A stretch of 64,000 nt of DNA from Zygnema circumcarinatum SAG 698-1b (GCA_037447605.1 CM074817.1:124001-188000); one strand, 5' to 3'. Numbered from the stretch's first letter, positions 34,455-56,365 are shown. The notes: generated by a model not told the origin, from the sequence alone. Numbers and translations: made by a program.

Positions 34455-37400
34455 GTACTGGTGCAAAACAAGAAAGGGAAAGACACAAGGAAAGGGCAAC
34501 ACATGCCACCGGGTATCCGAGAGCTCAAAACTTTTCTTTTTCTTCTCCTTGGGCCACATACCGCTTCCGCCACGATATGCCTTCTCGTCCACCTCTCGCC
34601 AGGTGCGCACAGCGGACAACTAAACACCCCACCTACAAGTGCACTTCTTCAACTCCTCCATGGTCTCGGCTCCTCGCTCCGCTCCTCAATGATCTCCTGG
34701 TGGGCAACACACACGCCCATACAATGGTCGCTCCACTCATCCACGCGTGATCAAGGGCTCACATGACCAAATGATCTGATGGTAAGGGAGAAGCCCGGCC
34801 CTAAAACTCCTTAAACTTCATGGAGTGTAATCTGGCTCCTTGAGAAATCCGTGATCCATTATGCTAGATTCTCACTACTCCCGCATAAACCTTATCCTAT
34901 CCTCTCATAGATAGCCTACACACCCCAGCTACTTGTGTAAGCACTACACACTCCATGAACTCCTCTCTGCCTCCCAACACATGAGGACACACCATCTAAC
35001 TTCTTCACTAAAGCTTAGCATGATGAGAGGCTGGATTCCTTCGACGCTACACAAGGCGGACTCCTCACAAGGCTCAGGCCTGCACTACTCTTCCCGCTGA
35101 CCATGATTGGCGGCCTTAACATTGAGAGGTAGGTAGGTGAAACCAAGCACTCCCTCTTAAACTATAGCGGCCCGGCGTGACGTGACACCCGATGTCATCC
35201 ACCGGGCGCACAACAACGCGTAAAATTCCAGCAGCGTGAAGCGTTCCAGCGGCGGCTACAGCGTTCAACGGCCAGCTACACCGCCGCGTAAACCTCGCCC
35301 GGCACCGACTGCCAAAGTGCGTAAAATGCTATTCCGCCGCCCGGCACGTACACGTCCGCCGCCCAGCCGTACATATCGGCCTCGATCCAAGATCTGGCTG
35401 GTCCCTCACCGGTTGGCACAAATGAAGCCGCCCGGACACGCACTAAGGAGTCCCAGCGATACGCGCCTCTCCATTGCTTGTAGGCATCTCAATCTCTTCA
35501 ACCGACTTCCGCGTCCGCGTCCGCCGAAGACTGCGTCGCTATCGCACGGCGGCGCGACCAATCATAAGCCGTCGCGAGATCCGCCTCTCGCGCCAAATAT
35601 CTCCGCGTCCATTTGTTTCGCGTCGTCCGTACAGTCGCGCGCCGTCCGTACGGCCGCGCTCCTTTTCGGTCAAGCACATTCCGTGCACCCCCTTTTGTTA
35701 GTGTATAGTAGTTAGTCACTTGACAAGTTGTTGTTGGGACATTAGTTTTGTGTGCGTGTGTTGTGTGTGTGGCCCTTGGCGGCGATGTGCGCGCCCTAGA
35801 CAGCGAGCGTGATGCGGACTTTAGTGAGTGGAGGCGCTGACGCCCACGGCCGTCGAAATTGACGAGTAGCGACAGGCGACTGGTCGAAATGTGGCGTGGC
35901 CTTGAGGAGCCAGCCGGGCAGCGGAAGCGGAAATGAAGATGTGACGCGGCCTTGTAGCAGCTTCTTAGCATAAATCAGCCCGGCCCAGCGGCCTTGTCCG
36001 GCCGCTGGATTAGGTGATTTGGACTTGGTAGCGAGAAGTGGCGTCGGTGTCGGCCTTGATTCAGGAGTATGCGGGCTGCGCGTCCCGGGTATGGGGGTGG
36101 CGTGAAGGCAGCGGCCAGCGAGGATTGGCGTCATCTATCTTGGAGGCAAGGTCAGATCCTACGGCGCCAAGGCGTGGATTGAGCAGGCGAGTCGGTCGAC
36201 GGAGCCCAATCTTTGGATCGTGTGATGTACACGAGGATCAGCGGATTAGGATGGGGATAAGCCCTTCTTGAGGAGCCACTTTAGTCGATGTTGTGAAGCT
36301 TAAATGTTGTCGCGTGTAGTGGCGTAGTATTTAAGGATTGTTTTGTTGTAGGCCAACCAAATTAAAATTTCAGTACATTGTAGTCTACTGTTATCTTTGT
36401 TAAATTTCGTGTTGACACTACACTTACTACGTCTTTGTGAGTAGTGGTACGTGAGATTCTTGGCCGATTTGAGAGGGGTCTCTACTCAATGTGTATGAGT
36501 GGGTCAGTATTAAGGAGTTTTAGAGCGGGGAGAACTTCCTCACATTATTTCTGTTATTCATTGTGCATTGACTGGCGCTGATTCACTCTGAGTAAAATGG
36601 CTATAGTGAATGTAGGGATTTGAAGATGTCATCGTCGATTGGAACGCGAACTCCGATGGAGGGTGACCCGAATGGAGGAACGGACGGCAGCAGTGGAGGA
36701 GTCCCTGCACCAACAAGTGGTATCAGAGCTCATGGAGACTCGGAGGACCACGTCAAGTTCAGCATTCCGGCCTTTGATGGGCAGGATTACAAGGCGTGGA
36801 GATGGAGGTTGGTTCCCTTGCTTGTAGGCAAAGGGTTGCTTGGGTATGTTGATGGCAGCATCAAGTAGCCGGAGTTACCGGTTGGAGCCTCTGCGGAGCA
36901 GCAGTCGGAGCACCACGTGGTGATCGCGCGATGGAGATCCAAGGACAACAAGGCCCTGACGCGGATTGTAATGAGCGTAAGAGGAAGTCCGTCCTCTATG
37001 CAATATGATCTGAAGACCTCTCATGCCATGTGGGGATGCTTAGAGGAAATGTGTGATGTAAAAGACAATGTGGCGATAGTCGGTCTTTCTGGCGGCTAGG
37101 CAAGATGAAGATGACCCCGGATGAAACTAGAAGCTTATATGAGGTGGTTTGATGCTCGTGGGAGAGGTTCATAGCCCTTGGGAAACCATTAGAGGCAGAC
37201 CATAAGATAAGCCAGTTTCTAGGGGGTTTGACCAGTAGATTCGATGTGGCAGTGGCGGCTTTGAGGACAGTCCTGACTAATACCACGATGACTCTTGAGC
37301 AAGTCAAAGCGTAGGATAAGGAGGAGGCGGACTCCATTAGGGATGTCGGCGGCCACGAGGTACTTGCGTTACGCGCTCGACCAAATCGAAGAGGAGGCCT

Positions 37401-40400
37401 TGAAGTCAGCGAGGGAGGCTTCGGCGGTCGTGTTATACATGTGGCAAGATGGGGCCACTACTCTGGCGATTGCTTCAAAAGAGCAGGCTGACCAAGAGAA
37501 GGGAGGGAAACTAGCGACTTCATCCGGCGAAAGGAGAAAAGCGTTCGGTGGCACTTGCTTCCAAATGCAAGAAGAGGAGCCCGCGGGAGTTGAGGCTGCA
37601 AGGTAGCAGTTGAGAACAACCTCATGCTGGCCGAGGAGAATACTGAGAATGCGTTTGTGGGAAGGATTCAGGTAGAGGATCCGAAGCGGCCGTGGCTGAT
37701 TGATTCCGGCGCTTCTACGCATATGTGCGGAGACACATCGATGTTCTCCAAGCTCGACGACTTGGAGAAGACACGCTCAGTCCATTCAGCAACCGGTGAA
37801 GGAGTCACCGTGACGAGAGGTGGAGCCGTGAGGATGATACTCGGAGACGGCTCGGTCATCAATGAAGAAGACATACAAGAGAAGTTGTCAATTGGTGACG
37901 TTCTTCACACCCCTGAGCTAAAGCAGAATTTCATGTCTGTTAGCCAAGTGTGTAAGAAAGGATACAGTGTTCTGTTTGAGGAGAAGTCATGCGTGGCCAT
38001 CCATACAGAAACTGGGAGACAGCTGTTTAGGGGTTATGAGAGAGGAGGGCTGTATTATCTTGATTATAAGAGGGAGAATTATGAGCATGCCAATGCAATC
38101 TCAGAGAATGCCGTAGATGTATGGCATAGAAGACTTGGTCACTTACACCATAGAGGGATGCAGCAGTTGGCTGAGAAGGGGTTAGTCCGTGGGCTAGACC
38201 CCGGTGTAGTGGAGAAGGAGCTTGGGTTGTGCCAGGAGTGTGTGGAGGGCAAGGCGCACAGGAGACCATTCGTGAGGAGTGGAGACGAGTCCTATCGAGC
38301 GCGAGAAAAGTTGGAATTGGTACATTCTGACTTGTGTGGCCCAGTTACACCGGCGACCAACGGCGGAGCACGTTACTTCGTCACGTTCCTCGACGATTAC
38401 TCGAGGAAGATTTGGATTACGCTCCTCAAGAACAAGTCGGAGGCTTTTAGGGCCTTTCGGGGGTAAGGTGAACCAGAGGCGGAGAGCGGGGAATGGGGCC
38501 CGGCGAAGGCTTTGCTGGCGTGAACAATGGCGAATTCAAATGAAGGAGTTCCGCGAGTTCTGAAGAACAGCGGTAGAGCATGAAAAAGAGATTCTACGCT
38601 ATTCCCCTCCCGAGCAATGCTGGAGGCGGTGGCGAGTGAATGGGACATTATTGGGGACATGGCTGGACCATGTTGATTGATTCCCCCTTTCCGTGACTTC
38701 TTTTTTGGGGAGAGGCGGTTTCTACTACTCGCATTACATTAGAAGCAGATATGGAGTCTTGATGCGAAGGCCGGGAGTCCTGGCGAGATGTGGAGTGGGA
38801 GGAAGCACGATTTCCACACGAGGACCTTTGGTAGCGATCTTTGGGCTGCACTGCCCAAGGCGACGAAGTTTGACCCGGCGGTGGAGGGTTATGTTCTCGG
38901 CTATAACACCAGCGGCCGCTTGCATTATGGGGTGTGGAACCCACCATTGCGGGAGGTCACGAGCACGAGGACATTACGATTGATGAGGGAAGTCTTTGTT
39001 GGCGTGTTGCGAGACTCTCGGTCTCTCCTCCGGCAGATTTGAGATGCGTGTATGAGGAGAGGGCAGAGTGGAGGCGTGATGTCAGCATGCGGGATGCGGC
39101 GCATCACGGAAGTGAAAGAGCCGAGCGGCAGGCTGCGTCCAGCGAGCTGGCGATGTTGGAAGTACGCCCGGGCGCATGGAAGGCCGCATTCGGCGGGAAA
39201 CGTTCGGTGCACACTGATTGAGTGAGGAAGAGGAAGGAAACTTTCCGTGGAGCGGTGCGGTACTCTACTGCACTTAAGAGTTAGAAGGACAGGCGGCCGA
39301 GAGAGGCTATGTTAGCTAACGGCCTCCGGGTTTTAATACCGGACTCTACTTCTATCCGAGGGGTGGCCTTGAAAGGAGATTGGAAGAAGGTGAGGACGGG
39401 GGCGACGGATCGGTACTCGCACGAGAACAACCTCATCAGAAGAGTGCCTTGGTCCGAGGTGACCTGCGTGGGAGTTGCCCATTGCTTTATGATCACGGAA
39501 CCACAGACCTTTGAGGAAGCACACGACGGAGTCGATGGCGACAAATGGCGGGTGGCGATCGATAGCGAGTGGGACAGCTTGATAGAGAACGGCACGTGGA
39601 GGTTGGAGGAGCTGCCTCAAGGGAGGCGAGCTATTGGCTGCAAATGGGTCTTCAAAGTCAAGAGGAAGGCAGACGGAAGCGTGGACAGATACAAGGCGCG
39701 GCTAGTGGCGAAGGGATACGCCCAGAAGTATGGAGTTGACTACGTGGAGACTTTCGCTCCAGTGGTAAAGTTCAACTCCTTGAGAGCCTTGATTTCCATC
39801 GCAGCGGCTGAAGGAATGCATGTCCATCAGCTGGACATCAAGACGGCATTCCTGTACGGAGATCTAACGGAAGAGATCTATATGGAGCAGCCGGAGGGGA
39901 AGGTGGTCCCAGGAAAGGAACACCTAGTCTGTCGACTAGTGAAGAGCCTATATGGTTTGAAGCAGGCGCCCAGAGTGTGGTACGAGAAGATAGATGATCT
40001 TCTGAGGAGGAATGGTTTCGACCGATTCGAAACAGATCATTCCGTGTACCGTCAAGGAGAGGGGGCGGACATCATGTTCGTCGGGATCTACGTTGATGAT
40101 CTCATAATGGTGAGCCTCTCGCTTGAAAGAATCAGTTCCTTGAAAGAGTTGCTTCAAGCAAATTTCAAGATGTCAGATTTGGGTGAGGCGCAGTATCTGC
40201 TTGGGATGCAGCTGAAGAGGGGGCAAGATGGCAGCTTATTCTTGTGTCAGAAGAAGTATGCATCAGATGTTCTTGCCCGGTTCCACATGGAAGATTCTAG
40301 GCCGTGCTCCAGCCCGATGGAGATAGGCGCTAGATTGTCGAAGGAGATGTCANNNNNNNNNNCCAGGAGCTTTCTCCTATTCATTTCTCTCTGTTATTCC

Positions 40401-41899
40401 GCTGTGCATTATTTGCTGTGATTCACTCTGTGAGTAAAATGGGCTATGAGTGAATGTGAGGGATTTGAAGATGTCATCGTCGATTGGAACGCGAACTCCG
40501 ATGGAGGGTGACCCGAATGGAGGAACGGACGGCAGCAGTGGAGGAGTCCCTGCACCAACACCTTTGGTACGGTCTAAGCCTAAGCCGTAATTCTACGACC
40601 CTAGACCTTCCCTAGACCTGCCGTACCATGCCCTAATGATACGGGCACCCCCCATGTTCGGTCCTACACCAAACATGACCATTCATACATGACATTGTCC
40701 CTATACCACCACATTGATGTCCCGGACAACATTCATGCTAGGAACTAAGTACCAACACCTTGATGTACCCTATACATCAACAATCCCCCTCTTGGTACGT
40801 AAGTTCCTTGCAAGCTATACTAACATGGCACCCTAAGCTTAAGCAACACTTTAAGCGTACCTTGCTGCTTGCTCACCAATTCCCTTGAATTGATTCCACC
40901 GTGAATGCAACAGCCATTGCACTCTCCCCCGGGCCACCTCCTCCTGAAGATGGTCTTCACTCCGCATGTGCAATCGTTGCACATCAGAACCTCCTTGAGC
41001 GCAATTGACACCTTGTCAACAATGTGGTGGGAACCTTCAACTTCTTGAACTCTCTAAAGTCATCCTCCAATGTAAACCCGAGAAGTCCTAACTTCTCCTC
41101 CCATCTCACACATTCAGAATGTCGTCTTCTTCATTGCCGCTCACCCCCTCATAAACATGAGGTCCTTCATAGTTGTCCTTTGAATCCTCCTAGTGGTTCT
41201 CTCGCCATTTGTTGTAGACCTCCACCCAAATGAAGTGCCGTCTTCACCAACAACTTCCTCTACACGATCCTGGGACCCCACACTATGAACTACCTTTGTC
41301 TCCCATGGACAAGCTCCCCTTAGCACCATCTGCCAAGGTCGAATCTGAACACCTTAACTACCCCTTCTTAAGCTAAACAGCCTCCTTGTACAAGGACTGG
41401 TCCTCCAAAGCCACCTCCAGCTTCGACATCTCGGCACCCTCCTCTTGTACTCCACCTTTGGGGTCTTAATTCTGCTCACTTACTCCATCAATGAGCCAGC
41501 TAACCAGATGTTCCTCTTCCCCTATCAAGGTCCTACAAACCTTGCTTGACACTTCCTTCATTGCATGTCAACTTCTCCAACGAGTGTAATTCTTGCACCT
41601 TCTTATGCATCTGAAAAACACCTCACTCCAGCTTAGTGACTTTCAAAGGAATACCAATAAGGGAAGTGTACTGCACCATCATCATGATGACATTCTCCAC
41701 ACTCTGCTCGTCCCTTGATTCCGTTGCCACCAGCCGCACCTCCAAGCGCTCCTTGCCGCCTCTTGATCTCCATGATCACTTGCAGCTCCTCGAATCTTCA
41801 AGGTCTATGCTTCAACTCTTCAGGATTGCTCAGCCTCCTCTATCATAGCATCTTCTTCATTTCTCCCCACTCGGGCCGAAGTCATCTGATCAGCATCTC
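34455..41899 (-). mobile_element. Family B copy B2: 3' LTR (40782-40566 plus 35695-about 34455, split by C), PPT 40783-40794, decayed RT/RH up to the 100-N gap
   Basis: Reverse complement of the B1 LTR and internal region; minus strand reads CAAGAGGGGGAT-TGTTGATG. Confidence 0.85.
35696..40560 (+). mobile_element. Ty1/copia family C: 5' LTR 35696-36715, PBS 36716-36729, gag-PR-IN-RT, gap 40353-40362, end of 3' LTR 40363-40560
   Basis: Perfect TSD CCTTT (35691-35695 and 40561-40565); WLIDSGASTHMCGD; VWHRRLGH; LELVHSDLCGP; YKARLVAKGY; YVDDL; identical LTR ends CCCTGCACCAACA. Confidence 0.93.
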
Positions 41900-41999: not shown

Positions 42000-42378
42000 A
42001 CTTTTCCTTTTTAATCAGACTGTACTTTGACCCTTACGGACATCGTACGATAGTGTCGCCATTTACTCCTAGGAGCGTTTCAATCCGGCAAAATTAGTGA
42101 TAGCATTGTTTAGAGTTAGGCTTTGCACACACTAGAAATAATACTCCCTCATAGTGACGGAAGGACTGTCAGCACGGTCTGTTCCGGCATATAACAGGTA
42201 AGTTACAAATATAGCTTTTTAAAAAGTGCCCTTTGTTTTTTTTTGTACAGTCATTGCCCTTGTGAGAAAAGCAAAGATATTCCGAAACAAGTCCATGTTT
42301 TCAACAAGTTCAACCTTGGCCGTGACGACTCATGTTTTCAGGCCTTGCTTGCTGGTGCACGCAGCTTTTCATATCAGC
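42000..42378. repeat. Paralogue of the 3' flank of the double-expansin gene (matches 49741-50099)
   Basis: Colinear similarity starting ACTTTTCCTTTTTAATCAGACTGTA in both places, with many substitutions. Confidence 0.85.
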
Positions 42379-43601: not shown

Positions 43602-44540
43602 GGGTAGTGTTATTTCCACCCCTTTTTTGGATCAAAACACCCCTTCCCGGCCGGGCAGATTTTATAATGGATTAAAAACAGAAAAAATACTTTTTTCACA
43701 CCTTTTTGGAATCGATACCAACCCTCCATCGGCAGATTTTATTTTTGAGAAACAAGGAAAATGATAACCCGTCCATTTTGAATATCCCGCCTCCCTGAAG
43801 TTTTTTTCACGCTTGCGGTCCATCGCAGCGGTCGATTTCCTCGCAAATCGCAACACGGCAGATCACTATTTGAGCTGCAGCCGGGCTCGGTCACAGCGAA
43901 TGGCACGTGCCCACGTATCCCGCCAATGTCGTCTCACCGTACAAAGTTCGTACGGTCGCAACTTTGAGGAACCCAAAATTTTGTATATTGAGATCTTGGA
44001 CCAGTCAAAAATATTCCACGTCAAAAACATAACACGTGGCAGATGTTCATTAGCTAGAAACTGACAATGACGAGATCTTCGGCCGAGGGACGCGAGAACT
44101 CGCACGTGTGATCCGGCTTTGACGGGACTCGTGGGCGCTTTCCATTCGCTGAGATCGAGCCAGGCTGCAGATCGAACGGTGATCTGCCGTGGTGCGATCT
44201 GCGAGGGAATCGACAGCTGCGATTGACAAACACGTGTGAAGGACGGACACCCGCGAACGATCTCGTGGCGGACGGATCTTCAGCTCCGAGCGGATTCGGG
44301 CAGGCCGATATTTCTTTCCCTCAAAAAAAAATTCAGGGAGGCGGGATACAGTATTCAAAATGTGGTGACGGGGTATCATTTACCTTAATGAGCAAAAAAT
44401 AAAATCTGCCGACGGAAGGAGGTGGGTATCGATTCCAAAAAGGTGTGTAAATAGCATTTTCCGTTTTTAATCTCTTTTGAAATCTGCCCGGCCGGGAAGG
44501 TGTGTTTTGATCCAAAAAAGGGGTGGAAATAACACTACCC
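43602..44540. mobile_element. Foldback/MITE-like non-autonomous DNA transposon with long inverted arms (over 300 bp), possibly Mutator-like
   Basis: GGGTAGTGTTATTTCCACCCC at 43602 has its reverse complement ending at 44540; inverted similarity continues to about 43935/44105. Flanks are A-rich with no clean TSD. Confidence 0.82.
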
Positions 44541-45051
44541 AAAAGAATATGGTCGAAATAGCCCGGAGGTAAGGTCCAATGATTGCGGCGGTTTGTCGTT
44601 CACGGTCACTGGACTAAACGGACCCGGACGGAGCGTATATCGGCATATCGTCATGTCTGTGTATCGTCATACCGGCATGCGGCGGGCGGCGGATCGGCGG
44701 CCGCCGCCGACCGCCGCACCGCGCGCCGCGGCCCGCCACGTGGCGGTGGCGGCGGGGCAAGCGGCCCCGCAGTCGAGGCCCTTATGAGGGAAGGAAGGGA
44801 CGAGGGAGGCACAGCAGCGCAGAGAGAGAGATATTGAGAGAGAGACAGAGAGAGACGGACACCGAGCACAGAGAGAGGCGGGAGTGAGAGGGAGAAGAAG
44901 TGCTTAGAGAGTAAAGCGGGAAGCAGCGCAGTGGGAGAGGGAGACCAAATTATATATTGAGTCACAGCAGGGTTCAAGTGAACGGTTGCCGATTGAATTG
45001 GACGGTTTGAAGGACTGCGGTTTGAGAAGTATCGAGTTTCGAGGACGCGGA

Positions 45052-48000
45052 ATGGCGATGGGAGGACGCGGGGGGACTGCGGGGAGGACGCTGGTTCGTC
45101 TTCTCACAGCAGTAGTGCAAATTGCCGCCTTTTGCAACAGCTCGGTGAGAGCGCAGAGTCTGTACGACTCGTCGTGGCTGAACGCAACGGCGACTTGGCA
45201 CGCCGTCGGGGACGGGGACGGCGACAGTGAGTTTAAGATTAGGACCATGAGGAATCGATAAGTTTATACTATAGCACGTATTGGTGGATGCGAAATTCAT
45301 GATTTTATTGTTCTTCTTCATGTAAACAGGTCATGTTCGAAGGTCTTTTCGTGATCAAGATCACCACTGAGTTACTGACTGACCAAGGTGTGGGTCGCAG
45401 GCGGTGCATGCGGATATGCTGCGACGGCGTTCGGAAAAATGGCAACAGCAGTGAGCGGCGGATTTTACCAAAAAGGAATGAGCTGCGGCGCATGCTATCA
45501 GGTGAGAGACAATGGCACGGGACTGTCTCCCTCTTTCTCTCTCACTACCCTATCCCCCCTCACATTTAGCTCTCTACCTCGTCCCCCCTCCCGCCCCACC
45601 AAGTCTCTCTCGCTCTATCTCGAGTGTTAACCTCCTCCCACATCTTCCGATGATTCAGGTTATATGCATGAGCAATACTCTATGCTCGCAACAGCCCATC
45701 GTCGTCACAGTCAGCGACGTCTGCGGCGGCTGCGGCAATGGGAACTTTCACTTCGGCATGACCCGCGAAGCCTTTGGAGCCATGGCGGTTGTCGGACAAG
45801 AGAATGTCATTACGAATGTGGGCTACATGAGCCGCGTGATGTACAAAAGGTCAGCTCAAAGGTTCAAATTATGAATGAATACGGTCAACGGAACAACCTC
45901 AGTTTGTAGGTTTGGAAGCAACTAAGCTGCAGAATGCCGAGCTTGGAGGTATTATTGATTTTCTCAGTTACTTTCCGACATGGGACCGAAGTGACAAATC
46001 CTATTCATTGCGGGATGATGCCCAGAGTGCCCTGCAACTACAAAAAGAAGGTGTCCTTCACTGTCAACGAAGGGAGCTCGGTGTGGCGGGTTCAACTTCG
46101 ACTTCGAGACGTAGGCGGACCCGGAACAGTGACGGATGTTTTGATCAAACCGGTGAGAGGGCATGAATGAAGCTATGAAATATATCACTCTGAGCGCCTA
46201 CCTATCCGGCAAGCACACCTTCATCCCTTCGACATTTTCCAAAATTCTTTCTTCTCTCTGTCATTGCAGAATAACTCCAACATTTTTCTTCCGATGAAGC
46301 ACGCTGACGGTGCGAACTTCTACATCCAGTCCCACGGAGAAAGATTTGATGGCCCCTACATAATCCAGCTTCGGAATAACATCACAGGTGAGTGGAAGAA
46401 GGAGCTTAGCAATGCGAGAGAACGGAGGTGGGAGAAGAAGCTCATGGAACAAATATCCGTTGCCGATAAAATCCTCTTTGAAATCGTAGAACTGCTTACA
46501 GTAAATTCAAATCCCTTCACTAAACAAAGTCAAAGCAGAGAAGTACTGTAGACCAATGCTTGCCACGATAGCAGCTGCTATGTATTCGTCATTGATTTTT
46601 TTTTTTTCTTAACTTTTTTTTTCCTTGCAGGTCAATCTTTGATATGTCCGAAATCCATCCCAGGCCCTTCTGAGCAGGGCCCCGCATTCGATTGCGGAGC
46701 ACAATTCCCTATTTCTGCCTTACCACCTTCACCGCTTCGCCGATCCCCTCCTCCCCCGCCGCCGCCTCCCCCCCCTGCCCCCCCCCCGCCCAGACTTCCT
46801 CCTTCTCCTCCACCGTCGCCACGTGTCAACGGTCCCCCGCTATACGGGAGAGTGTGGTACAACGCGACCACCACGTGGTATCCCGGCGTGCCGCCTCAGG
46901 GCAATCCTGATGGTAAGATATCGCCAACGCATTTCTCTCCCTCCTCTCTCCCTCCCTCACCCCCTCTCTCGCGTTCCTCCACTCCCTCTGACACGTGGCA
47001 CCTCCTAGTTCAGGTGGAAACTGCGGGTACCTTGCGCTGAACAGCACGGCGTACGGGAGAATGGCGGCCGCTGGCAGCCAGGCGCTCTTCATGAAGGGAG
47101 CTGGCTGCGGGACGTGCTATCAGGTGCGGCCACGTGGCATGAATCCCTGGCTCGCTTTGCACGGCCATGCAACATGGACCCCTGAGGCCGCACAGCCGGT
47201 TCTAATGGCTGCTGCTATCGGCCCCTCGTGGCTGCAGATCAAGTGCACGAGCAACCCTGCATGCAGCTCGAAGCCGATCACTGTCACGATCACGGATGTG
47301 TGTCCGAGCAACGAAAAGGCGAGCCCCAACTGGTGCGGCGACGGGAAGGTTCACTTCGACCTCACAAGGGAGGCGTTTTCCGCCATGGCTATCCCCTCGG
47401 CAATGGCCAGTTTCCCGGGTAAAGGCTACATGAGCGGCGTACTTTACCGAAGGTGAATTTCTCCCTCTTTTTTGGACAAGCAAACTTGTCAAGGACAGTC
47501 ACGAACACCTCTTTTCTTTCCCACTTTTTCTATCGTTCCCTCACCCTCCCTCCCTCTCCTCCGTGCAGGGTACCATGTGTGTATCAAAAACCCATTTCCT
47601 TCGCCTTCTGGAATGGAAGCTCCGTCTGGTGGCTCAATATCATCCTGCGCGATGTGGGTGGTCCCGGAAACATGACAGACGTCTACATTCGTCCGGTAAA
47701 TCCTTGCCCTTACGAACTTTTAGGGGAAAAAATTCGAAAGAGATTTGGTTGGCAAAAACGTTGGTTGGTGCTAGTGACTAAAAGATCCTTGTTGCTCGTT
47801 TGGGTTTTGGCGCAGTCAAATTATAACAGCTTCCTTCGGATGAATTTCAAATGGGGAGCGGGCTACGACGTGCAGTCGACGGGAACGCCGTTTAATCCTC
47901 CATACGAAATGAAGCTGGTCAACAACGTGACAAGTGAGGCAGCTAGTTTGTTAACAGTTGATAAGAGTGTCCCTTATGACATACTGATCATCCCTCGCAG

Positions 48001-48267
48001 CCGCCGTTTGCTTCTCAATCACTGGAATCGCTATGCGGCTTCTGCGCCGCTTCTCTTGATTGGTGAGACTGCAAATGTCTGCAGAAGATAGGACTGACAT
48101 TTCCCAAATCCTTTCTGAATGGTTTTGCAGGGGAATCTGTGACCTGTCCGAATCTGATCAATGGCCCATACCCTTACCGCACACCCTTCAGCTGCGGAGC
48201 TCAATGGCCCACGCGAGGCAGCCGCGCTTCTCCTCCTCCTCCTCCGCAATCAAGGCGGGCAGCTTAA
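45052..48267 (+). CDS. Tandem two-module expansin-like protein (566 aa) with a Pro-rich linker. Exons 45052-45226, 45401-45501, 45659-45849, 46026-46152, 46270-46387, 46631-46912, 47014-47123, 47238-47452, 47569-47695, 47816-47933, 48131-48267.
   Basis: All introns are GT-AG; exon total is 1701 nt, open to TAA at 48265-48267. N-terminal hydrophobic segment; two GxCGY...CGxCYQ...VPC...DVGGPG sets; exon 6 reads through SPPPPPPPPPPAPPPP into the second ATTTWYPG. Confidence 0.88.
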
Positions 48268-48349
48268 GGCGCTGGATATGGGGAATCGCTTGCCACGAGT
48301 TCTGCAACAATTAGGAAATTGCCCTTCGCCATCTTCTATNNNNNNNNNN

Positions 48350-49544
48350 GGCAGCCAGGCGCTCTTCATGAAGGGAGCTGGCTGCGGGACGTGCTATCAG
48401 GTGCGGCCACGTGGCATGAATCCCTGGCTCGCTTTGCACGGCCATGCAACATGGACCCCTGAGGCCGCACAGCCGGTTCTAATGGCTGCTGCTATCGGCC
48501 CCTCGTGGCTGCAGATCAAGTGCACGAGCAACCCTGCATGCAGCTCGAAGCCGATCACTGTCACGATCACGGATGTGTGTCCGAGCAACGAAAAGGCGAG
48601 CCCCAACTGGTGCGGCGACGGGAAGGTTCACTTCGACCTCACAAGGGAGGCGTTTTCCGCCATGGCTATCCCCTCGGCAATGGCCAGTTTCCCGGGTAAA
48701 GGCTACATGAGCGGCGTACTTTACCGAAGGTGAATTTCTCCCTCTTTTTTGGACAAGCAAACTTGTCAAGGACAGTCACGAACACCTCTTTTCTTTCCCA
48801 CTTTTTCTATCGTTCCCTCACCCTCCCTCCCTCTCCTCCGTGCAGGGTACCATGTGTGTATCAAAAACCCATTTCCTTCGCCTTCTGGAATGGAAGCTCC
48901 GTCTGGTGGCTCAATATCATCCTGCGCGATGTGGGTGGTCCCGGAAACATGACAGACGTCTACATTCGTCCGGTAAATCCTTGCCCTTACGAACTTTTAG
49001 GGGAAAAAATTCGAAAGAGATTTGGTTGGGAAAAATGTTGGTTGGTGCTTATGACTAAAAGATCCTTGTTGCTCGTTTGGGTTTTGGCGCAGTCAAATTA
49101 TAACAGCTTCCTTCGGATGAATTTCAAATGGGGAGCGGGCTACGACGTGCAGTCCACGGGAACGCCGTTTAATCCTCCATACGAAATGAAGCTGGTCAAC
49201 AACGTGACAAGTGAGGCAGCTAGTTTGTTAACAGTTGATAAGAGAGTCCCTTGTGACATACTGATCATCCCTCGCAGCCGCCGTTTGCTTCTCAATCACT
49301 GGAATCGTCATGCAGCTTCTGCGCCGCTGCTCTTGATTGGTGAGACTGCAAATGTCTGCAGAAGATAGGACTGACATTTCCCAAATCCTTTCTGAATGGT
49401 TTTGCAGGGGAATCTGTGACCTGTCCGAATCTGATCAATGGCCCATACCCGTACCGGACACCCTTCAGCTGCGGAGCTCAATGGCCCACGCGAAGCAGCC
49501 GCGCTTCTCCTCCTCCTCCTCCGCAATCAAGGCGGGCAGCTTAA
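48350..49544 (+). CDS. Second, 5'-truncated copy of the double-expansin gene (module 2 exons, offset 1277 from the first copy)
   Basis: Near-identical to 47073-48267 immediately after the gap 48340-48349; differences are substitutions, mostly intronic or synonymous. Confidence 0.8.
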
Positions 49545-51176
49545 GGCGCTGGATATTTGGAATTGCTTGCCACTAGTTCTGCAACAGTTAGGAAATTGCC
49601 CTTCGCCATCGTCTATGGAATATGATGTCCAAATATTTTCAGCGATTCGACGAGACACGTCGAAGTTGAAGTAGGCGTGAGGGGCTTGAAGGGCTCGCTA
49701 GGTGCATGTTGTGTGCACCTCAAAGCTGTGCTTTAGAGCTACTTTTCCTTTTTAATCAGACTGTATTTGAACGCTTGCGGACATCGTACAATAGTTTCGC
49801 CCTTTACTCCTAGGAGCGTTTTAATCCGGCAATATTAGAAATAGTATTGTTTAGAGTTAGGCTTCGCACACACGAGAAATAGATCTCCCTCATGGTGACG
49901 GAAGGTCTGCCAACACGGTCAGCTTCGGCATATGACAGATTAATTACAAATGTAGGTTTTTGAAAAGGTCCTTTTGGTTTTTTGTACAGTCATTGCCCTT
50001 GTGAGAAAAGACAAGAGATTCCGAAACAATTCCATGTTTTCAACTAGTTTACATTTTGGCTGGCTTGGCTTAAAGGGTGCACGCAGTTTTGCATGTCTTG
50101 TTTTGATCATCTATTGAAGACTCCACGTCGCTTCGTCCTAAAATTACAACAGCAGAGATACTTGTTTTTTTTTTTTTTGTTTTGGTTGGAATGTCCCTCC
50201 GCGGTTTACACCCCTTCAGTTTGCAAATGGCACTGTACCCTTAGCTCAACAGCACCGCGCAATTCAGCGCCAGTCGAAAGCGAGTCCCTTCGAGACGAAA
50301 AAGGAAACTGAGAAAAGCATATTAGGAAAATGCATATTGACCGACCATGCCTGGGTTTAATTATTTTAAATTTTGTGTACCTGTTCATTCCGAAATTTTG
50401 CCTTTAGTTGTGCGGTCAGCCCTGGCTTGGCGGCTTTGGAACAGCTTTTCACGGCGAAGCCTTTGACGATGAGTTATCAACTTTGTTGGAGAACGTTGGC
50501 AATCACAAGGCGCAGGAAAGACTATAGCGGAAGCAAAGCTAATACGTGTAGACTTTATTATGCAGAGCCCGTCAGACGTGAGTACCGCGGTAAAGTCTTC
50601 ACCGGTGAATTACTAATTGTTCTATCACGTCTTGTCACTATTGAAAAAGACGGAGTGGACATTGTACGATCAAAGTGAGGACAGAGAGAGTTGACACAAA
50701 AAGACAGATGTGTGATTAACGTGGTACAGTGTACAATGTCCTAATCTGTTTTATATACATTGCGGCTAGAGCTACGCGACAAAAGAACGTGGAACTAGCC
50801 TGAGCAAAGGGCGGCCGGGTGTGAAGCACAGAGCCGCAAAGGTACAACTAAACTAACAAAAAAAGTACAAGCTAAAGGTACAGCCAGGTGTAAGTACACG
50901 TTGCTAGGAAAACGACAAAAGAGTACGAGAAAACTGAGAATGTCGGATTCTCAACACTCCCTCTCATTCGAAAGTGTGGAGTCCAGGAGCCGATGGTCAA
51001 AGCTGGCCGATGTGCGCCTTGGTAAGAAAATCACCTACGTTCGCTACCGGGTAGGACGTTAGGAGGAAGGTAAGGGTGTCGTCTTCGATCTTGTCCCTAG
51101 TGAAGTGGAACTGAATGTCGATGTTTTTGGTACGTTGATGGTGCACGGGGTTTTGCATGAGGGCAAGGGCACCTTG

Positions 51177-51620
51177 TGTAGCGAAACGCTATACATGGGT
51201 TGTATGGCCGAGTACTTACATCCGCGGTTGCCTTCTAATGGTAAAGCACTTAGGTGAATACCGGGAGGTCCTGAGTTCAAACCCTGCTGCAGGCAGGTTC
51301 GTTACATTGGTATCAGAGCCTAAGGACTGGTATTTGCAATCCACCCTAAAAACACCGTGATCTCTGAGCATGGTACGGTTGGCCAGAGGGTCTGAATCGT
51401 ATATTTGTGCATATGTTGAAGGAGCTTGAACGCTGCTCGTGAAAAACCTTGACTGCGCTCGAGGACGAGCCCGGTTTAGGTGGGGAGGAATGTAGCGAAA
51501 CGCTATACATGGGTTGTATGGCCGAGTACTTACATCCGCGCTTGCCTTTTAATGGTAAAGCACTTAGGTGAATACCGGGAGGTCCTGAGTTCGAACCCTG
51601 CTGCAGGCAGGTTCGTTACA
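51177..51620 (+). mobile_element. TRIM (444 bp) with 130-bp LTRs (51177-51306, 51491-51620) that contain a tRNA-like module; inserted in the RNase H of D
   Basis: Perfect TSD CCTTG; TG...CA ends; PBS TGGTATCAGAGC at 51308-51319; PPT AGGTGGGGAGGAA; the LTRs differ at 3 positions; no ORF. Confidence 0.95.
51540..51608 (+). other. tRNA-like sequence within the TRIM 3' LTR (equivalent at 51226-51294 in the 5' LTR)
   Basis: GCTTGC/GCAGGC acceptor-like pairing, D-loop-like TAATGGTAAAGC, and AGGTCCTGAGTTCGAACCC with a B box (GTTCRANNC). The cloverleaf is imperfect, so this is not a functional tRNA. Confidence 0.75.
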
Positions 51621-54600
51621 CCTTGAGAGTCCGTGAAGACGGTGGTAGCGTGAGGGGGGGGAAAAGTGAGGTTGGAGAGGAGGGATCGGAGCCAAACAAC
51701 CTCTTTGGCAGCAGTGGAGGCGGCCATATACTCTGCTTCAGTGGAGGATGTGGCCACCGTAGGCTGCTTCCGAGAGGACCATGAGATAAGGCCACTGCCC
51801 AAAGAAAAACACGAGCCAGTAACCGAACGCCTTGTGTCGGGGTCACTGCCCCAGTCAGAGTCACAAAAGCCAACAAGGGTGGGGGAGCCAGAGGAGAAGG
51901 TAAGGCTCAGGGCCTTGGTGCCCTGAAGGTAACAAAGGACACGCTTGGCAGCGCTGAAGTGAGCAGGGGAGGGGCGGTGAAGGTATTGGCTGAGCTGCCG
52001 GACGGCGGCAGCTAGGTCGGGCCGAGTACACATCATTGCATACATAAGGGATCCCACGATGGATCGGTAAGTGGCATGCTCCGTGGGGTCGGGGGAGCCA
52101 ACCACAAGGGAGGTAAGGTGAATGTGGGCGTCCAGGGGGGTGGAGATGGGGTTGCAAGCGGCCATCCCAAATCGGTCAAGGAGATTGGAAACATATTTTT
52201 CCTGACTGAGGTGAAGGGTCCGAGCAGCCCGATCTCGAATGACGTGAATCCCGAGACACCATTGCAGTTCGCCGAGGTCGGTCATGTCAAAGTGGCTGCG
52301 AAGGAGCTGTTTGACAGCCGAAATGGGGGGAAGGGAGGGACCACAGATGATTAGGTCATCAACGTAAACCGCAAGGATAGTGAGGGTCTGACCGTGGCCA
52401 CGAAGATAGATGCTGAAATCGGCTTCGATGCGAGTGAAGCCGCTTGNNNNNNNNNNGTGACATACCCGTCGGGTTGGCGCATAAAAATCGTTTCTTGAAG
52501 GTCCCCGTAGAGGAATGCGGTTTTGACGTCCATCTGGTGAATTTCCCAATCGTGGGTGGCGGAGAGAGCAAGGAGGACGCGAATGGAGGTGAATTTGGCC
52601 ACCGGGGCATAAGTTTCGGTGAAGTCGATGCCTTCAAGCTGAGAGAACCCCTTGGCTACAAAACGGGCTTTATAGCGGTCAACCGAGCCGTCGGATTTTT
52701 GTTTGTTGCTGAATACCCATTTGGAGCCGATGGCGCGACGACCGGGTGGGAGGGGGACAAGGTCCCACGTGTTGTTTTTCTGAAGGGAGAGGAATTCAGC
52801 ATCAGCGGCAGCTTTCCAGAGGGCGGCGTCAGGGGTGCGAAGGGCGGCAGCAAAAGTAGGCGGGGCAGATGAGGAGGCGACGAAGGCCATGGCGGAGGAA
52901 AGGAGGGCATGGGCGGCAGTGTCGATAATTTTCCACGTGGGTCGTCGATCGCGAGTGCCATGGCGGGGGGCAGGGCCGGGGGGAACCGGAAGGGAGAGGG
53001 CCGGAGGGCGGGGTGGCGGGGAGGCCGCGACCGGTGGAAAGGGGAGGGGAAGTCGGGGAGGCGGGAGAGAGTGCTGAGGGGGAGGAGGGGGCTGGGCCGC
53101 AGTGCAGGGGAGGGTTCCGCGCCCGGCCTCGGTGACAACTGAACTCCCTCTGACAGAAGAGGGAGGGTCGAGAGAGAGATGAGGGGAGGGAGGGGGGAGC
53201 GGGAGGGGGGTTGAATGGAGGGACGTGAAGTACCCAAAGAGAGGGAAAGGGAGCGGCGATGAGGGCGGGGAGAATAGGAATGTCGGTGGCCAATGGGGGA
53301 GCGGCTGCGGGGGGGGGAGGTGAATGATATCCAACGGTCACATAGGTGGGGGAATCGTACGGCGCAAGATTGGGATTCGGCGGGGAGGAAGTCGGCGGGT
53401 GTACGGACGTGGTCGCTGGCAAATGAAGCTGCGCGACGAGCCATGGATGTCGACGTCGCGCAAAACACAGCTCAAACTCATCGCACAGACACCAGACTCG
53501 ATCAGCCCTACAACGTGAGCGCGTGTCCCACAGGAGAGTGCCGCGTGGCCTCGCGTCCCCATTGGCACGGCTGGACGGGGTTTTTGTGCCAGGCCTGGCA
53601 CCAGAGCTGCGGAGGTGGGAAAGCAAAGGTGCCGTCCCTCCCAGGCCTCGTAGGGATTGTTGTGAGGAAGGGCAGAGGTGGGAGAAAGGTTCCGAAGGTA
53701 AGTGGCCGTGGAGATGGCTTCCGCCCAGAAGGCCATAGGGAGGTCGGCAAAATGAAGCATAGAGCGAGCCATGTCAAGAATGGTGCGGTTAAAGCGCTCG
53801 GCGACTCCATTTTGCTGGGGGGTGTAGGGAGCGGTAGTCTGATGGGTGATGCCGTGAAGGCGAAGGTATTTGGAGAAGGCGGTGGACATAAACTCGCCGC
53901 CGTTGTCAGTGCGGAGGGTCTTGATGCGGCGACCGAGAAGGGTCTCTGCACGGGCTTTGAACTCTTGGAAGCGGGAGAAAACGTCAGACTTGTGAGCGAT
54001 GGGAAAAACATGGGAAAAATGAGTCGCTTGGTCAATGAAAGTGACAAAGTATGATGCGCCGCCGAGGCTAACATCGCGCATAGGGCCACAGACATCAGAA
54101 TGAATGAGTGCCAGAGGCTCAGAGACAAGGGTGGAGCTTGAGGGAAAAGGCAATCTGGTCATTTTTCCTTGAATACAGCCGGAACAAAAAGCTAACTTCT
54201 CGGTAGAGAAGGAGTCTAAGCCTAACACTAAGCCCTGGCCGAGAGTTCTGAGGCTGCTTTCAGCAAGGTGGCCAAAACGGAGATGCCACCGAGCAAAGGT
54301 AAGGGGGGGGTCAGTGGTGTGAGCATGGGCGTGCCCAAGGGAGGCTGCAAAAGAGGTAAGGGAAAATAAGCGGCCGGTTTTGCGGCCGTGCCCAACTACA
54401 GCTTCTGGGGTGAAGAAAGAAACCCCGTCTGGCCTAAAAAGAGTTGAAATGCCTAAAATCAGGATGGAGGCTACTGAAAACAGATTCTTCGCTAGTCCAT
54501 CCACCAGGTAGACGTCATCGATGATGAAGCGCTGGCCGTCAATTAGAGTGGAAACCTGGCCGACATGCGTGGAGCGAAGGAGCGGTTATCCTGCAAATGG

Positions 54601-56365
54601 TCATGGGAGAGGAGAGAGCCAGAGAACCAGCCACGACGAAAGGTTAGATGAGATGGGAGGCACCCAGTCAACAAGCTGAAGTTGAGGGAGAGAAGGGTCA
54701 TACCTAAAAGGGTCCGCGGCCACAAAGGCGTGACTGAACTTGGAGCACCGTAGACGACACCCCGTGGGGTGGAGGTGGGCCGGGGGGGAAGCCGGGGTGA
54801 GCGAGGGTGTACGGCGGGGCGGTGGCCCGCGGAAACCAAGGGAGCGAGGACGTGAGGGAGAGGGGCCACGCAAGCTGTACGACAGGTTCAGCGGGGCTCG
54901 GGTCGAGGGGGCCAATCGGAGGCGCCGCGACACCGCTGCGCCAGCTGGGTCAGGCACGACGGCGCTGGAGCCGGCGTGCCTCCTTTTTGGCCAGAGCGGC
55001 AGTTGTCCTTTCACGTGAGTCTGTTCCCTCGCAATATTGACAAAAAAAGCGCCGATGTACTTGGACGCAGGTCATATCCAAGAGCGCGGACGTGTGGGAG
55101 GGACCTGGAGGTGGAACCCCTCCTCCTCGCCAAAAGAGGGTCGGCGAGACCAGCGACGGTTAGTGAGATCGAGGCAGCATCAATGGACGAGATGAAGGAC
55201 CGGAAAGAGTCGGGCAGCCCGCCTAAAAGATTACAGATGATCTCATCATCATGAACTACGCAATCAATGCTGCGAAGCCGTCTAGCAAAGGATTTGACGC
55301 GGTCAGTATATGTCAGCATGGTTTCAGAGGATTCCTTTACGCAGTTAGTGAAGGCACGCCGCAAACGGAGTTTGTGAGACCACTTCCGAGGTTCGTACGC
55401 ATTGGTCAGAAGAGTCCAAGCGTCGTGGGAGCTGGTGGCGTCACGGACGTGTCCGATGAGACTGCGCTGAATGCCGAGTGTGATGCGGAGAAACGCCTTC
55501 TTGTCGCGTTTTGTCCAATCGGCGATCTCCTTCGCGCGTGCAGCCAAGGCGGCCGCGTCGGCGGTGGAGGGAAGTGGCAAAGGACAGGTCTCTAGACCAG
55601 TAACGACAGACCACAGATTCTCTTCCTAAAAAAGCAGCTGGCACTGAAACTTCCAGTCGTGCCAGTTTGTCCCATCAAATTTTTCAAGCGCATTTGAGGC
55701 ATGAGTGGNNNNNNNNNNACAAAAAGACAGATGTGTGATTAACGTGGTAAAGTGTACAATGTCCTAATCTGTTTTATATACATTGCGGCTAGAGCTACGT
55801 GACAAAAGAGCGTGGAACTAGCCTGAGCAAGGGCGGCCGGGTGTGAAGCACAAAGCCGCAAAGGTACAACTAAACTAACAGAAAAAGTACAAGCTAAAGG
55901 TACAGCCAGGTGTAAGTACACGGGGCTAGGAAAACGACAAAAGAGAACGACAAAACTGAGAATGTCGGATTCTCAACAGTCACGACTGACTGCTCATTCC
56001 CAAAGGCACTGATAAGGGATCCAAGAATCATCACGGGCAATGCAGCGCAGTCCACGGTGGAGTGCCGGCGGCCCGTTGCAGGCGCATGCACGCGAGGCAG
56101 CAGGTGTACGGCCAGATTCGAGGCGCACTCACGCGCACTTAGGGACGATTCAAGGATCCCAATCCGCCCAGGAATCAACGACCGTAATGCCCAATCGAAT
56201 GGGCAACAAACTCAGCAAGAAATAGGGGGAGTCAGACCTTGACCATCGCCAAATCAATTTCGCCAGCCCGTCGGGCCAATTCTGCTTTGTACGGCAGGCC
56301 TTTTTCGCCAAAAGTGGACGTGCGACAGACTCGGGCGTCACGAATTCAAGAAAGCAATTATTTTA

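What the first reader, a model, noticed from the sequence alone, without database searches (positions are those of the whole stretch)
45052..48267. Single gene encoding two expansin modules joined by an extensin-like linker
Seen: one continuous spliced frame of 566 aa: signal, expansin 1, SALPPSPLRRSPPPPPPPPPPAPPPPRLPPSPPPSPR, expansin 2, SPPPPP tail. Exon 6 carries the end of module 1, the linker and the start of module 2 with no stop. Exons 4/9 (127 nt) and 5/10 (118 nt) match in size and phase, indicating whole-gene internal duplication. Established: plant expansins are normally single DPBB+CBM63 units of about 250 aa, and SPn motifs are hydroxyproline O-glycosylation sites. Inference: a bivalent wall protein with a stiff glycosylated spacer, able to bridge or loosen two polysaccharide strands. 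I do not know of a characterised example.
Basis: partly seen in the sequence, partly recalled or inferred. Interest (0 to 1): 0.88.

Follow-up and report, generated by a model that had tools for sequence, protein, structure and literature searches.

The report
Transcribed gene encoding a double expansin
This is a real, expressed plant or algal gene in which two complete copies of the wall-loosening protein expansin are fused in one reading frame through a proline-rich spacer; this layout is rare, but a partial precedent was published for the desmid alga Micrasterias.

Summary
Eleven GT..AG exons (45052-48267, + strand) give one 566-aa frame: signal peptide, expansin unit 1, a 37-aa Pro-rich linker, expansin unit 2, and a short SPPPPP tail. 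The two units are 50% identical and share all five intron positions and phases.

RNA contigs from four runs in three studies confirm all ten splice junctions. They cross the linker exon without a break. One 1290-nt contig runs from the 5'UTR into exon 8.

The gene most likely arose by tandem duplication followed by an in-frame fusion. The Pro-rich C-terminal tail typical of this clade became the linker, and unit 2 lost only its signal peptide.

The clade (unit 1, unit 2 and a single-unit relative, P0003) is sister to vascular-plant beta-expansins. Unit 2 keeps the HFD motif and the domain-2 aromatic residues. Unit 1 has lost them (HFG, WR, DG), so the protein is asymmetric rather than simply bivalent.

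The layout is not unprecedented. Micrasterias MdEXP2 (2011, cloned and GFP-tagged) carries a second expansin-like unit, and a Phytophthora protein has two CBM63 domains.

The near-identical copy after the N gap (48350 onward) is most likely an uncollapsed allele.

Function is inferred, not shown. I rate this a new variant of a known kind, of moderate interest.

The parts
44867..45051 (+). 5' UTR (minimum extent), with no upstream ATG
   Evidence: RNA contigs start at 44867 (X1), 44880 (X2) and 44915 (X4). The uATG scan was empty.
45052..45153 (+). Start codon and signal peptide (aa 1-34, predicted cleavage after VRA)
   Evidence: The hydrophobic core is at aa 13-27, with Kyte-Doolittle values up to 2.2. 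The mature N-terminus aligns with that of P0003.
45154..46713 (+). Expansin unit 1 (aa 35-265; exons 1-5 and the start of exon 6), with domains 1 and 2 complete and 10 Cys
   Evidence: The beta-expansin profile hits aa 20-249 at 170 bits. DPBB_1 is found in exon 3. Alignment.
45749..45757 (+). HFG in unit 1, where expansins have the HFD motif (Asp replaced by Gly)
   Evidence: Alignment with P0003 and 12 plant expansins; coordinates.
46075..46092 (+). Unit 1 domain-2 site SSVWRV, where unit 2, P0003 and plant expansins have two aromatic residues (WW/YW)
46300..46320 (+). Unit 1 domain-2 site HADGANF, where the conserved Trp of the WG motif is replaced by Asp
46631..46912 (+). Exon 6, the fusion exon: end of unit 1, linker and start of unit 2 in one open frame
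   Evidence: RNA contigs X2 rec 4, X3 rec 10 and X4 rec 12 cover 46628-46911/46914 with no differing letters.
46714..46824 (+). 37-aa Pro-rich linker (aa 266-302) with SP10 and SP3 runs, an RR pair and no Tyr
   Evidence: It lies at the position of the Pro-rich C-terminal tail in P0003 and in unit 2 itself.
46825..48213 (+). Expansin unit 2 (aa 303-549; end of exon 6 to exon 11), with no signal peptide of its own and 10 Cys
   Evidence: The profile hits aa 311-533 at 181 bits. DPBB_1 is found in exon 8 at 6.6e-9. The N-terminus is not hydrophobic.
47352..47360 (+). HFD motif retained in unit 2
47618..47635 (+). Unit 2 domain-2 aromatic pair (SSVWWL)
48214..48267 (+). C-terminal tail RGSRASPPPPPQSRRAA and the TAA stop
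48340..48349 (.). Assembly gap (10 N) inside the 3' UTR
48350..49616 (+). Near-identical second copy of 47073-48339. It is gapless with 20 SNPs, the first 680 nt are identical, and the frame is intact with one G>S change. It is most likely an uncollapsed allele or strain variant.
   Evidence: Its specific 31-mers are held by some runs (X10 1.00, X11 0.89, X6 0.83). They are barely held by X1 (0.17), whose contigs match copy 1 exactly. X2-X4, which match copy 1 at 47073-48339, do not appear in that list.

Best explanation
This is a genuine, transcribed gene for a secreted tandem 'double expansin'.

Shown here:
- One 566-aa frame over 11 exons encodes a signal peptide, a complete expansin (domain 1 DPBB plus domain 2 CBM63-like), a 37-aa Pro-rich linker, a second complete expansin and a short SP5 tail.
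- The mRNA is spliced exactly as predicted and runs through the linker exon.

Inferred origin: two tandem paralogues of a beta-expansin-like clade were fused by an in-frame deletion. Members of this clade end in a Pro-rich tail. The deletion removed the stop codon, the intergenic DNA and the signal-peptide codons of the downstream gene. As a result the upstream gene's tail became the linker, and unit 2 begins exactly at the mature N-terminus.

Inferred mechanism:
- Unit 2 is the active wall-loosening unit. It keeps the HFD Asp, the TW(Y) Thr, the TD Asp and the aromatic platform of domain 2.
- Unit 1 is a degenerate partner. It has lost the HFD Asp and two conserved aromatic residues, yet evolves no faster than unit 2. 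It probably serves as a targeting, binding or spacing module.
- The SPn linker is probably hydroxylated and O-glycosylated into an extended spacer of roughly 10 nm.
For: Gene model and frame.

Two full-length expansin matches: 170 and 181 bits; every single-unit beta-expansin hits the protein twice; DPBB_1 in exons 3 and 8.

Transcription:
- All ten junctions are seen as GT..AG joints, or as adjacent contig pieces, in runs X1-X4 from three studies.
- X4 record 12 (1290 nt) runs from 44915 through exons 1-7 into exon 8.
- X2 record 4 and X3 record 10 cross exon 6 with no mismatches.
- X1 record 3 (1307 nt) runs from inside the linker to beyond the stop.
- Intron 5 has zero depth in all runs.

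Origin:
- Intron phases are identical in both units.
- P0003, the closest relative, is a single unit followed by a Pro-rich tail. Its mature N-terminus aligns with the first residues of unit 2.
- The tree gives (unit 1,(unit 2,P0003)) at 100/99 and 96/81 support, so the two units are old paralogues.

Asymmetry. Branch lengths are similar at 1.45, 1.39 and 1.47.

The frame is also intact in the variant copy, which has 3 synonymous and 1 non-synonymous exonic changes.
Against: - Contigs are assemblies of short reads, not single molecules. A minor transcript that starts or ends inside the gene cannot be excluded.
- Contigs covering exons 8-11 have 1.5-1.9 times the word depth of those covering exons 1-7, and contigs break near 47257-47287 in three runs. 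This is unexplained.
- There are no protein-level data. The linker holds an RR pair that could be a processing site.
- Loss of the HFD Asp does not prove inactivity. The Micrasterias expansins lack HFD altogether (PMC3191482).
- No orthologous fusion was found in other organisms, so conservation of the fusion is unknown.
- The full-length protein could not be submitted to Pfam or folded, because the spliced sequence has no reference.
Confidence: 0.72

Rival explanations
1. Polyprotein precursor. The fused gene is translated as one chain so that both units share one signal peptide. It is then cleaved in the linker, for example at the RR pair, to release two separate expansins.
For: Unit 2 has no signal peptide of its own. 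The linker contains LRRS and ends in PR just before the mature-like N-terminus of unit 2.
Against: No cleavage data exist. Pro-rich O-glycosylated stretches are usually protease-resistant (general knowledge). Single-unit relatives keep such tails uncleaved as far as the sequence shows (P0003).
Confidence: 0.15
2. Two overlapping transcription units. Besides the fusion mRNA, a shorter transcript for unit 2 alone starts from an internal promoter, and this explains the higher depth over exons 8-11.
For: Depth over exons 8-11 is 1.5-1.9 times higher, and contigs break at 47257-47287 in X2, X3 and X4.
Against: A product starting there would lack a signal peptide and the first third of domain 1. The same pattern could come from 3' bias, from a variant near 47256, or from a near-identical second copy. 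No loose ends or start pile-ups were reported in exons 6-8 (tables 6 and 7).
Confidence: 0.08
3. Assembly or annotation artefact. Two neighbouring expansin genes were wrongly joined.
For: The assembly around the gene is imperfect. There is an N gap at 48340 followed by a redundant copy. Public databases hold angiosperm 'double expansins' that look like merged tandem genes (P0001, P0004, P0056, P0073).
Against: The junction lies inside one uninterrupted exon with no gap. Independent RNA contigs from three studies reproduce it exactly and splice it to exon 5 and exon 7.
Confidence: 0.03

Closest known systems
Micrasterias denticulata MdEXP2 (HE578720; Vannerum et al. 2011, PMC3191482)
   Same: It is a secreted streptophyte expansin in which a complete expansin is followed in the same polypeptide by a second expansin-like unit. 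DPBB_1 lies at 56-136 and again at 302-385. The extension aligns to an alpha-expansin through domain 1 and the first half of domain 2, up to aa 441 of 448.
   Different: MdEXP2 is EXPA-like and lacks HFD in general, and its reported second unit is incomplete. No SPn linker was mentioned in the parts I read. The authors treated the extension as EXLA-like and did not discuss a double expansin. The gene here is beta-expansin-like, has two complete units and an SP10 linker, and keeps HFD only in unit 2.
Beta-expansins / group-1 grass pollen allergens (maize EXPB1, PDB 2HCZ; Phl p 1, PDB 1N10)
   Same: These are the closest solved structures to the clade (P0003 versus 1N10 at 3e-30 and 2HCZ at 2e-28). 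They are also the closest land-plant sequences at 35-41% identity. The two-domain DPBB plus CBM63-like unit is the same, with HFD and the aromatic residues present in unit 2.
   Different: They are single units of about 260 aa. The clade here is a sister group to vascular-plant EXPB, not nested within it. It ends domain 2 with a C-x16-CGAQ(W/F) motif and a Pro-rich tail.
P0003 (401 aa, from a public transcriptome contig, SRR8128903)
   Same: It is the nearest relative found, about 50% identical to each unit. It has the same motifs, the same C...CGAQW end of domain 2 and a Pro-rich region right after it.
   Different: It has one unit only. Its Pro-rich tail is C-terminal (about 135 aa) rather than a linker.
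Phytophthora parasitica PPTG_19415 (expansin-like, two CBM63; PMC4176579)
   Same: An expansin-family protein with a duplicated module, reported from genome annotation.
   Different: It comes from an oomycete, only the CBM63 is reported as duplicated, no transcript or protein evidence is given for the layout, and the lineage is unrelated.
Extensins / hydroxyproline-rich glycoproteins
   Same: Ser-Pro(n) runs (SP10, SP3, SP5) of the kind that are hydroxylated and arabinosylated in HRGPs (general knowledge; motifs).
   Different: The stretch is only 37 residues with no repeated SP4 array and no Tyr cross-linking motifs. It is a linker, not an extensin domain.

Membership tests
Expansin superfamily | N-terminal DPBB (GH45-like) domain 1 with conserved Cys | tested here: met
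   Pfam DPBB_1 is found in exon 3 (2e-5) and exon 8 (6.6e-9). Each unit has 10 Cys. The alignment shows the GxCGY and CGxCY motifs in both units.
Expansin superfamily | C-terminal domain 2 (Expansin_C / CBM63-like) directly after domain 1 | tested here: met
   The profile of 125 beta-expansins covers model positions 12-246 and 32-246 of 262 in the two units. Pfam Expansin_C on a single 42-aa exon gave only 0.066, because the exon is shorter than the domain. P0003, the full-length relative, scores 3e-10.
Expansin superfamily | Secretion signal | tested here: met
   There is one N-terminal hydrophobic signal (aa 13-27) for the whole protein, and none before unit 2. This was judged by hydropathy and alignment, not by a dedicated predictor.
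Expansin superfamily | HFD motif of EXPA/EXPB | tested here: inconclusive
   Unit 2 has HFD and unit 1 has HFG. The feature is met for one half only.
Expansin superfamily | pH-dependent wall creep without hydrolysis | not testable with these tools
   This needs recombinant protein and extensometer assays.
EXPB (beta-expansin) family | Phylogenetic placement within EXPB rather than EXPA | tested here: inconclusive
   The clade (unit 1, unit 2, P0003) is sister to 15 vascular-plant EXPBs (94/91) and apart from 10 EXPAs. That makes it a sister group rather than a nested member, and the tree has long branches and only a midpoint root.
Extensin / HRGP | Repeated Ser-Hyp4 blocks with Tyr cross-link motifs | tested here: not met
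   There are only SP10, SP3 and SP5 runs, and no Tyr in the linker.
Double expansin of the MdEXP2 type | A second expansin-like unit C-terminal to a complete expansin in one transcript | tested here: met
   The comparison with MdEXP2 rests on the paper's tables and its supplementary BLAST alignment. No sequence comparison with MdEXP2 was made.

The most novel reading that the evidence does not exclude
The fusion is a functional, lineage-specific innovation: a single secreted glycoprotein in which a non-loosening expansin unit anchors or targets an active one across a rigid spacer of about 10 nm. This would give a wall-loosening agent with a reach, or a cross-bridging ability, that single expansins lack. 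Together with the other expansin fusions that first readers noted nearby in this genome, it would show that this lineage builds modular expansins, much as microbes build modular cellulases.
Probability: 0.3. Interest if true: 0.65.

Novelty: new variant of a known kind. Interest (0 to 1): 0.5.

Why it matters
How expansins loosen walls is still not understood. A natural protein that couples one unit with intact conserved sites to one unit with those sites lost, on a defined spacer, is a ready-made experiment. Each unit and the full fusion can be compared in creep and binding assays to separate binding from loosening.

It is also a clean, transcript-supported case of a new multidomain wall protein arising from tandem duplication plus in-frame fusion. 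It also shows that a beta-expansin-like clade with Pro-rich tails exists outside the vascular-plant EXPB group.

The importance is moderate, because the layout has a partial published precedent and no function has been shown.

Tried and rejected
1. Whole-protein Pfam, structure prediction, fold search and exact look-ups for the 566-aa product were not run. I used exon-by-exon Pfam and a local profile instead.
2. Searching for the window's own protein or orthologous fusions found none. This covered the representative library with exon 8, the word-indexed search with P0003, exon 6 (no hits) and an alignment seeded with all exons. Only P0003 and the more distant P0028 are near.
3. Angiosperm predicted proteins with two DPBB_1 were considered as evidence that the layout is common. 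They are Oldenlandia P0001, Digitaria P0004, Striga P0056, Fraxinus P0073 and Eleusine P0111. I did not count them as such. They are single-member clusters in the results I have, come from automatic annotation, and have truncated units, so they are probably merged tandem genes.
4. I looked for a paralogue just upstream, because 42000-42310 resembles 49741-50049. tblastn finds no expansin there, only Copia-type ORFs.
5. I tried to identify the organism through a retroelement ORF look-up (none on record) and through Table S2 of Wang et al. 2024. No listed algal expansin has 566 aa and 11 exons. The organism remains unknown.
6. I considered the after-gap copy as a third, real partial unit. I rejected this as the leading reading because its variant and the copy-1 variant occur in different samples.

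Full report
**1. The observation.**

Reading 44500-48900 and splicing at GT..AG sites gives 11 exons. They are 45052-45226, 45401-45501, 45659-45849, 46026-46152, 46270-46387, 46631-46912, 47014-47123, 47238-47452, 47569-47695, 47816-47933 and 48131-48267. Together they make 1701 nt, which is 566 codons plus TAA.

The exon sizes of the two halves are 101/110, 191/215, 127/127 and 118/118 nt. The intron phases are 1,0,2,0,1 in both halves.

Exon 6 holds the end of unit 1, a 37-aa linker (aa 266-302, genomic 46714-46824) and the start of unit 2, with no stop.

The two units are 49.8% identical over 231 aligned residues. The local score is 576, against 34 +/- 4.6 for shuffles.

**2. Are both halves complete expansins?**

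- Pfam on single exons finds DPBB_1 in exon 3 (2e-5) and exon 8 (6.6e-9), and a weak Expansin_C in exon 4.
It matches the protein twice, at aa 20-249 (170 bits) and aa 311-533 (181 bits), covering nearly the whole model each time.
- Each single-unit expansin also hits the protein twice in BLASTP.
- The alignment shows that the Cys-containing stretch C-x16-CGAQ(F/W) is the end of domain 2, not an extension.
- Only the N-terminus has a hydrophobic signal (aa 13-27). Unit 2 has none.

**3. Is it transcribed as one unit?**

RNA contigs of four runs from three studies were laid on 44700-48339.

- Nine junctions are listed as GT..AG joints.
- The tenth, exon 5 to exon 6, is seen as adjacent pieces of the same contigs (46269-46384 followed by 46628 onward).
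- X4 record 12 (1290 nt) runs from 44915 through exons 1-7 and 52 nt into exon 8.
- X2 record 4 and X3 record 10 cross the whole of exon 6 with no mismatches.
- X1 record 3 (1307 nt) runs from inside the linker to beyond the stop.
- Intron 5 has zero depth in all runs.
- Low-depth contigs retain intron 1 (X3) or intron 6 (X2, depth 8.5 against 37). These look like pre-mRNA.

Two things remain open. Contigs are not single molecules. Also, contigs over exons 8-11 have 1.5-1.9 times the depth of those over exons 1-7, with contig breaks at 47257-47287. This could reflect 3' bias, a variant site, a second near-identical copy or an internal start. I could not tell which.

**4. The copy after the gap.**

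A 10-N gap at 48340-48349 is followed by a gapless copy of 47073-48339. It has 20 SNPs, and the first 680 nt are identical. Its frame is intact. Of the four exonic changes, three are synonymous and one is G>S.

A 201-nt piece specific to this copy is fully held by some runs of study P2 (X10 1.00, X11 0.89, X6 0.83). It is held at only 0.17 by X1. The runs whose contigs match copy 1 at 47073-48339 (X2-X4) do not appear in that list.

Variants that segregate among samples point to an allele or strain variant left uncollapsed at a scaffold join. They do not point to a third unit.

**5. Relatives and origin.**

The nearest protein found is P0003. It is 401 aa, from a public transcriptome contig, and about 50% identical to each unit. 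It is a single unit followed by a Pro-rich tail that starts right after CGAQW. Unit 2 ends the same way (SPPPPP).

The first residues of unit 2 (PLYGRVW...) align with the mature N-terminus of P0003 (APLYDKKW...) and of unit 1 (SLYDSSW...). The linker is therefore the former C-terminal tail of an upstream gene. The fusion removed just the stop, the spacer DNA and the signal-peptide codons of a downstream paralogue.

A maximum-likelihood tree gives (unit 1,(unit 2,P0003)) with 100/99 and 96/81 support. This clade is sister to vascular-plant EXPB (94/91) and separate from EXPA. The units are therefore old paralogues, not a recent internal repeat. Their branch lengths are alike (1.45, 1.39, 1.47), so unit 1 is not decaying faster.

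The closest solved structures to the clade are Phl p 1 (1N10) and maize EXPB1 (2HCZ).

**6. Asymmetry.**

Unit 2 and P0003 keep HFD, the WW pair and the WG tryptophan of domain 2. Unit 1 has HFG, WR and DG at these sites.

From established work on bacterial EXLX1 and on EXPB1, the HFD Asp and the aromatic platform matter for loosening and binding. This is my own knowledge and was not checked here. I therefore infer that unit 2 is the active unit and unit 1 an accessory one.

This is inference. The Micrasterias expansins lack HFD altogether (PMC3191482).

**7. The linker.**

It has SP10 and SP3 runs, an RR pair and no Tyr. It resembles HRGP spacers but fails the extensin definition. Hydroxylation, glycosylation and an extended shape of about 10 nm are inferences.

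**8. What is known.**

- Full-text searches for tandem, double or bimodular expansin phrases gave nothing.
- Vannerum et al. 2011 report that MdEXP2 of the desmid Micrasterias (448 aa) has DPBB_1 twice (56-136 and 302-385). Its C-terminal extension aligns to an alpha-expansin through domain 1 and half of domain 2. The gene was cloned by RACE, GFP-tagged and overexpressed.
- A Phytophthora parasitica expansin-like protein has two CBM63 domains.
- Wang et al. 2024 list several long algal expansins (451-744 aa in Penium). I found no comment on architecture in the parts I read.
- Angiosperm database entries with two DPBB_1 are predictions with truncated units. They are single-member clusters in the results I have and are probably merged tandem genes.
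- No orthologous fusion was found. The lineage is poorly represented in the searched collections, so absence means little.

**9. Verdict.**

The feature is real and transcribed, and it is a clean case of duplication followed by fusion. It is a new variant of a known kind: a beta-expansin-like double expansin with two complete units, an SPn linker and asymmetric conserved sites. It is not a categorically new architecture. Function is untested.

Earlier notes of this scan on the same genome were used as follows:
- The notes on an expansin-extensin chimera and an expansin with a CBM49-like domain nearby suggest that modular expansins are a habit of this genome. I did not check them.

Noticed in passing
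window 983-1679, minus strand: Another expansin gene at the window's start. tblastn of the fusion protein hits 1183-983 (43% identity, domain 1 core) and 1679-1572 (53%). First-stage notes describe it as an expansin with an extra CBM49-like domain. I did not check that.
   Followed up: no
window 42000-42310 and 49741-50049: About 310 nt just downstream of this gene's 3' region recurs at 85-93% identity directly after a 100-N gap, 3 kb upstream of the gene. It may be a small repeat, or the 3' flank of another gene copy hidden in the gap. No expansin-coding sequence lies before it.
   Followed up: partly
window 50696-50959 and 55719-55981; 51600-53000 minus strand: Direct repeats of about 265 nt, 95-97% identical and 5.0 kb apart, flank sequence whose minus strand reads like a Copia-type polyprotein by eye. 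It looks like an LTR retrotransposon, interrupted by N gaps at 52447 and 55709.
   Followed up: no
window 51177-51306 and 51491-51620: Two 130-nt direct repeats, 98% identical and 314 nt apart. A first-stage note calls this a TRIM with tRNA-like LTRs.
   Followed up: no
window 36600-40420, plus strand: Copia-type retroelement ORFs (gag-like, integrase-like 37624-38466, reverse-transcriptase-like 39309-40421) fill the region upstream of the gene. An N gap lies at 40353.
   Followed up: no
window 47257-47287: RNA contigs of three runs break here inside exon 8, and downstream contigs have 1.5-1.9 times the depth of upstream ones. This is unexplained.
   Followed up: partly
window 45685: A C>T difference in exon 3 is seen in RNA contigs of X3 and X4 but not of X1 and X2. 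It is probably a strain or allele variant.
   Followed up: no
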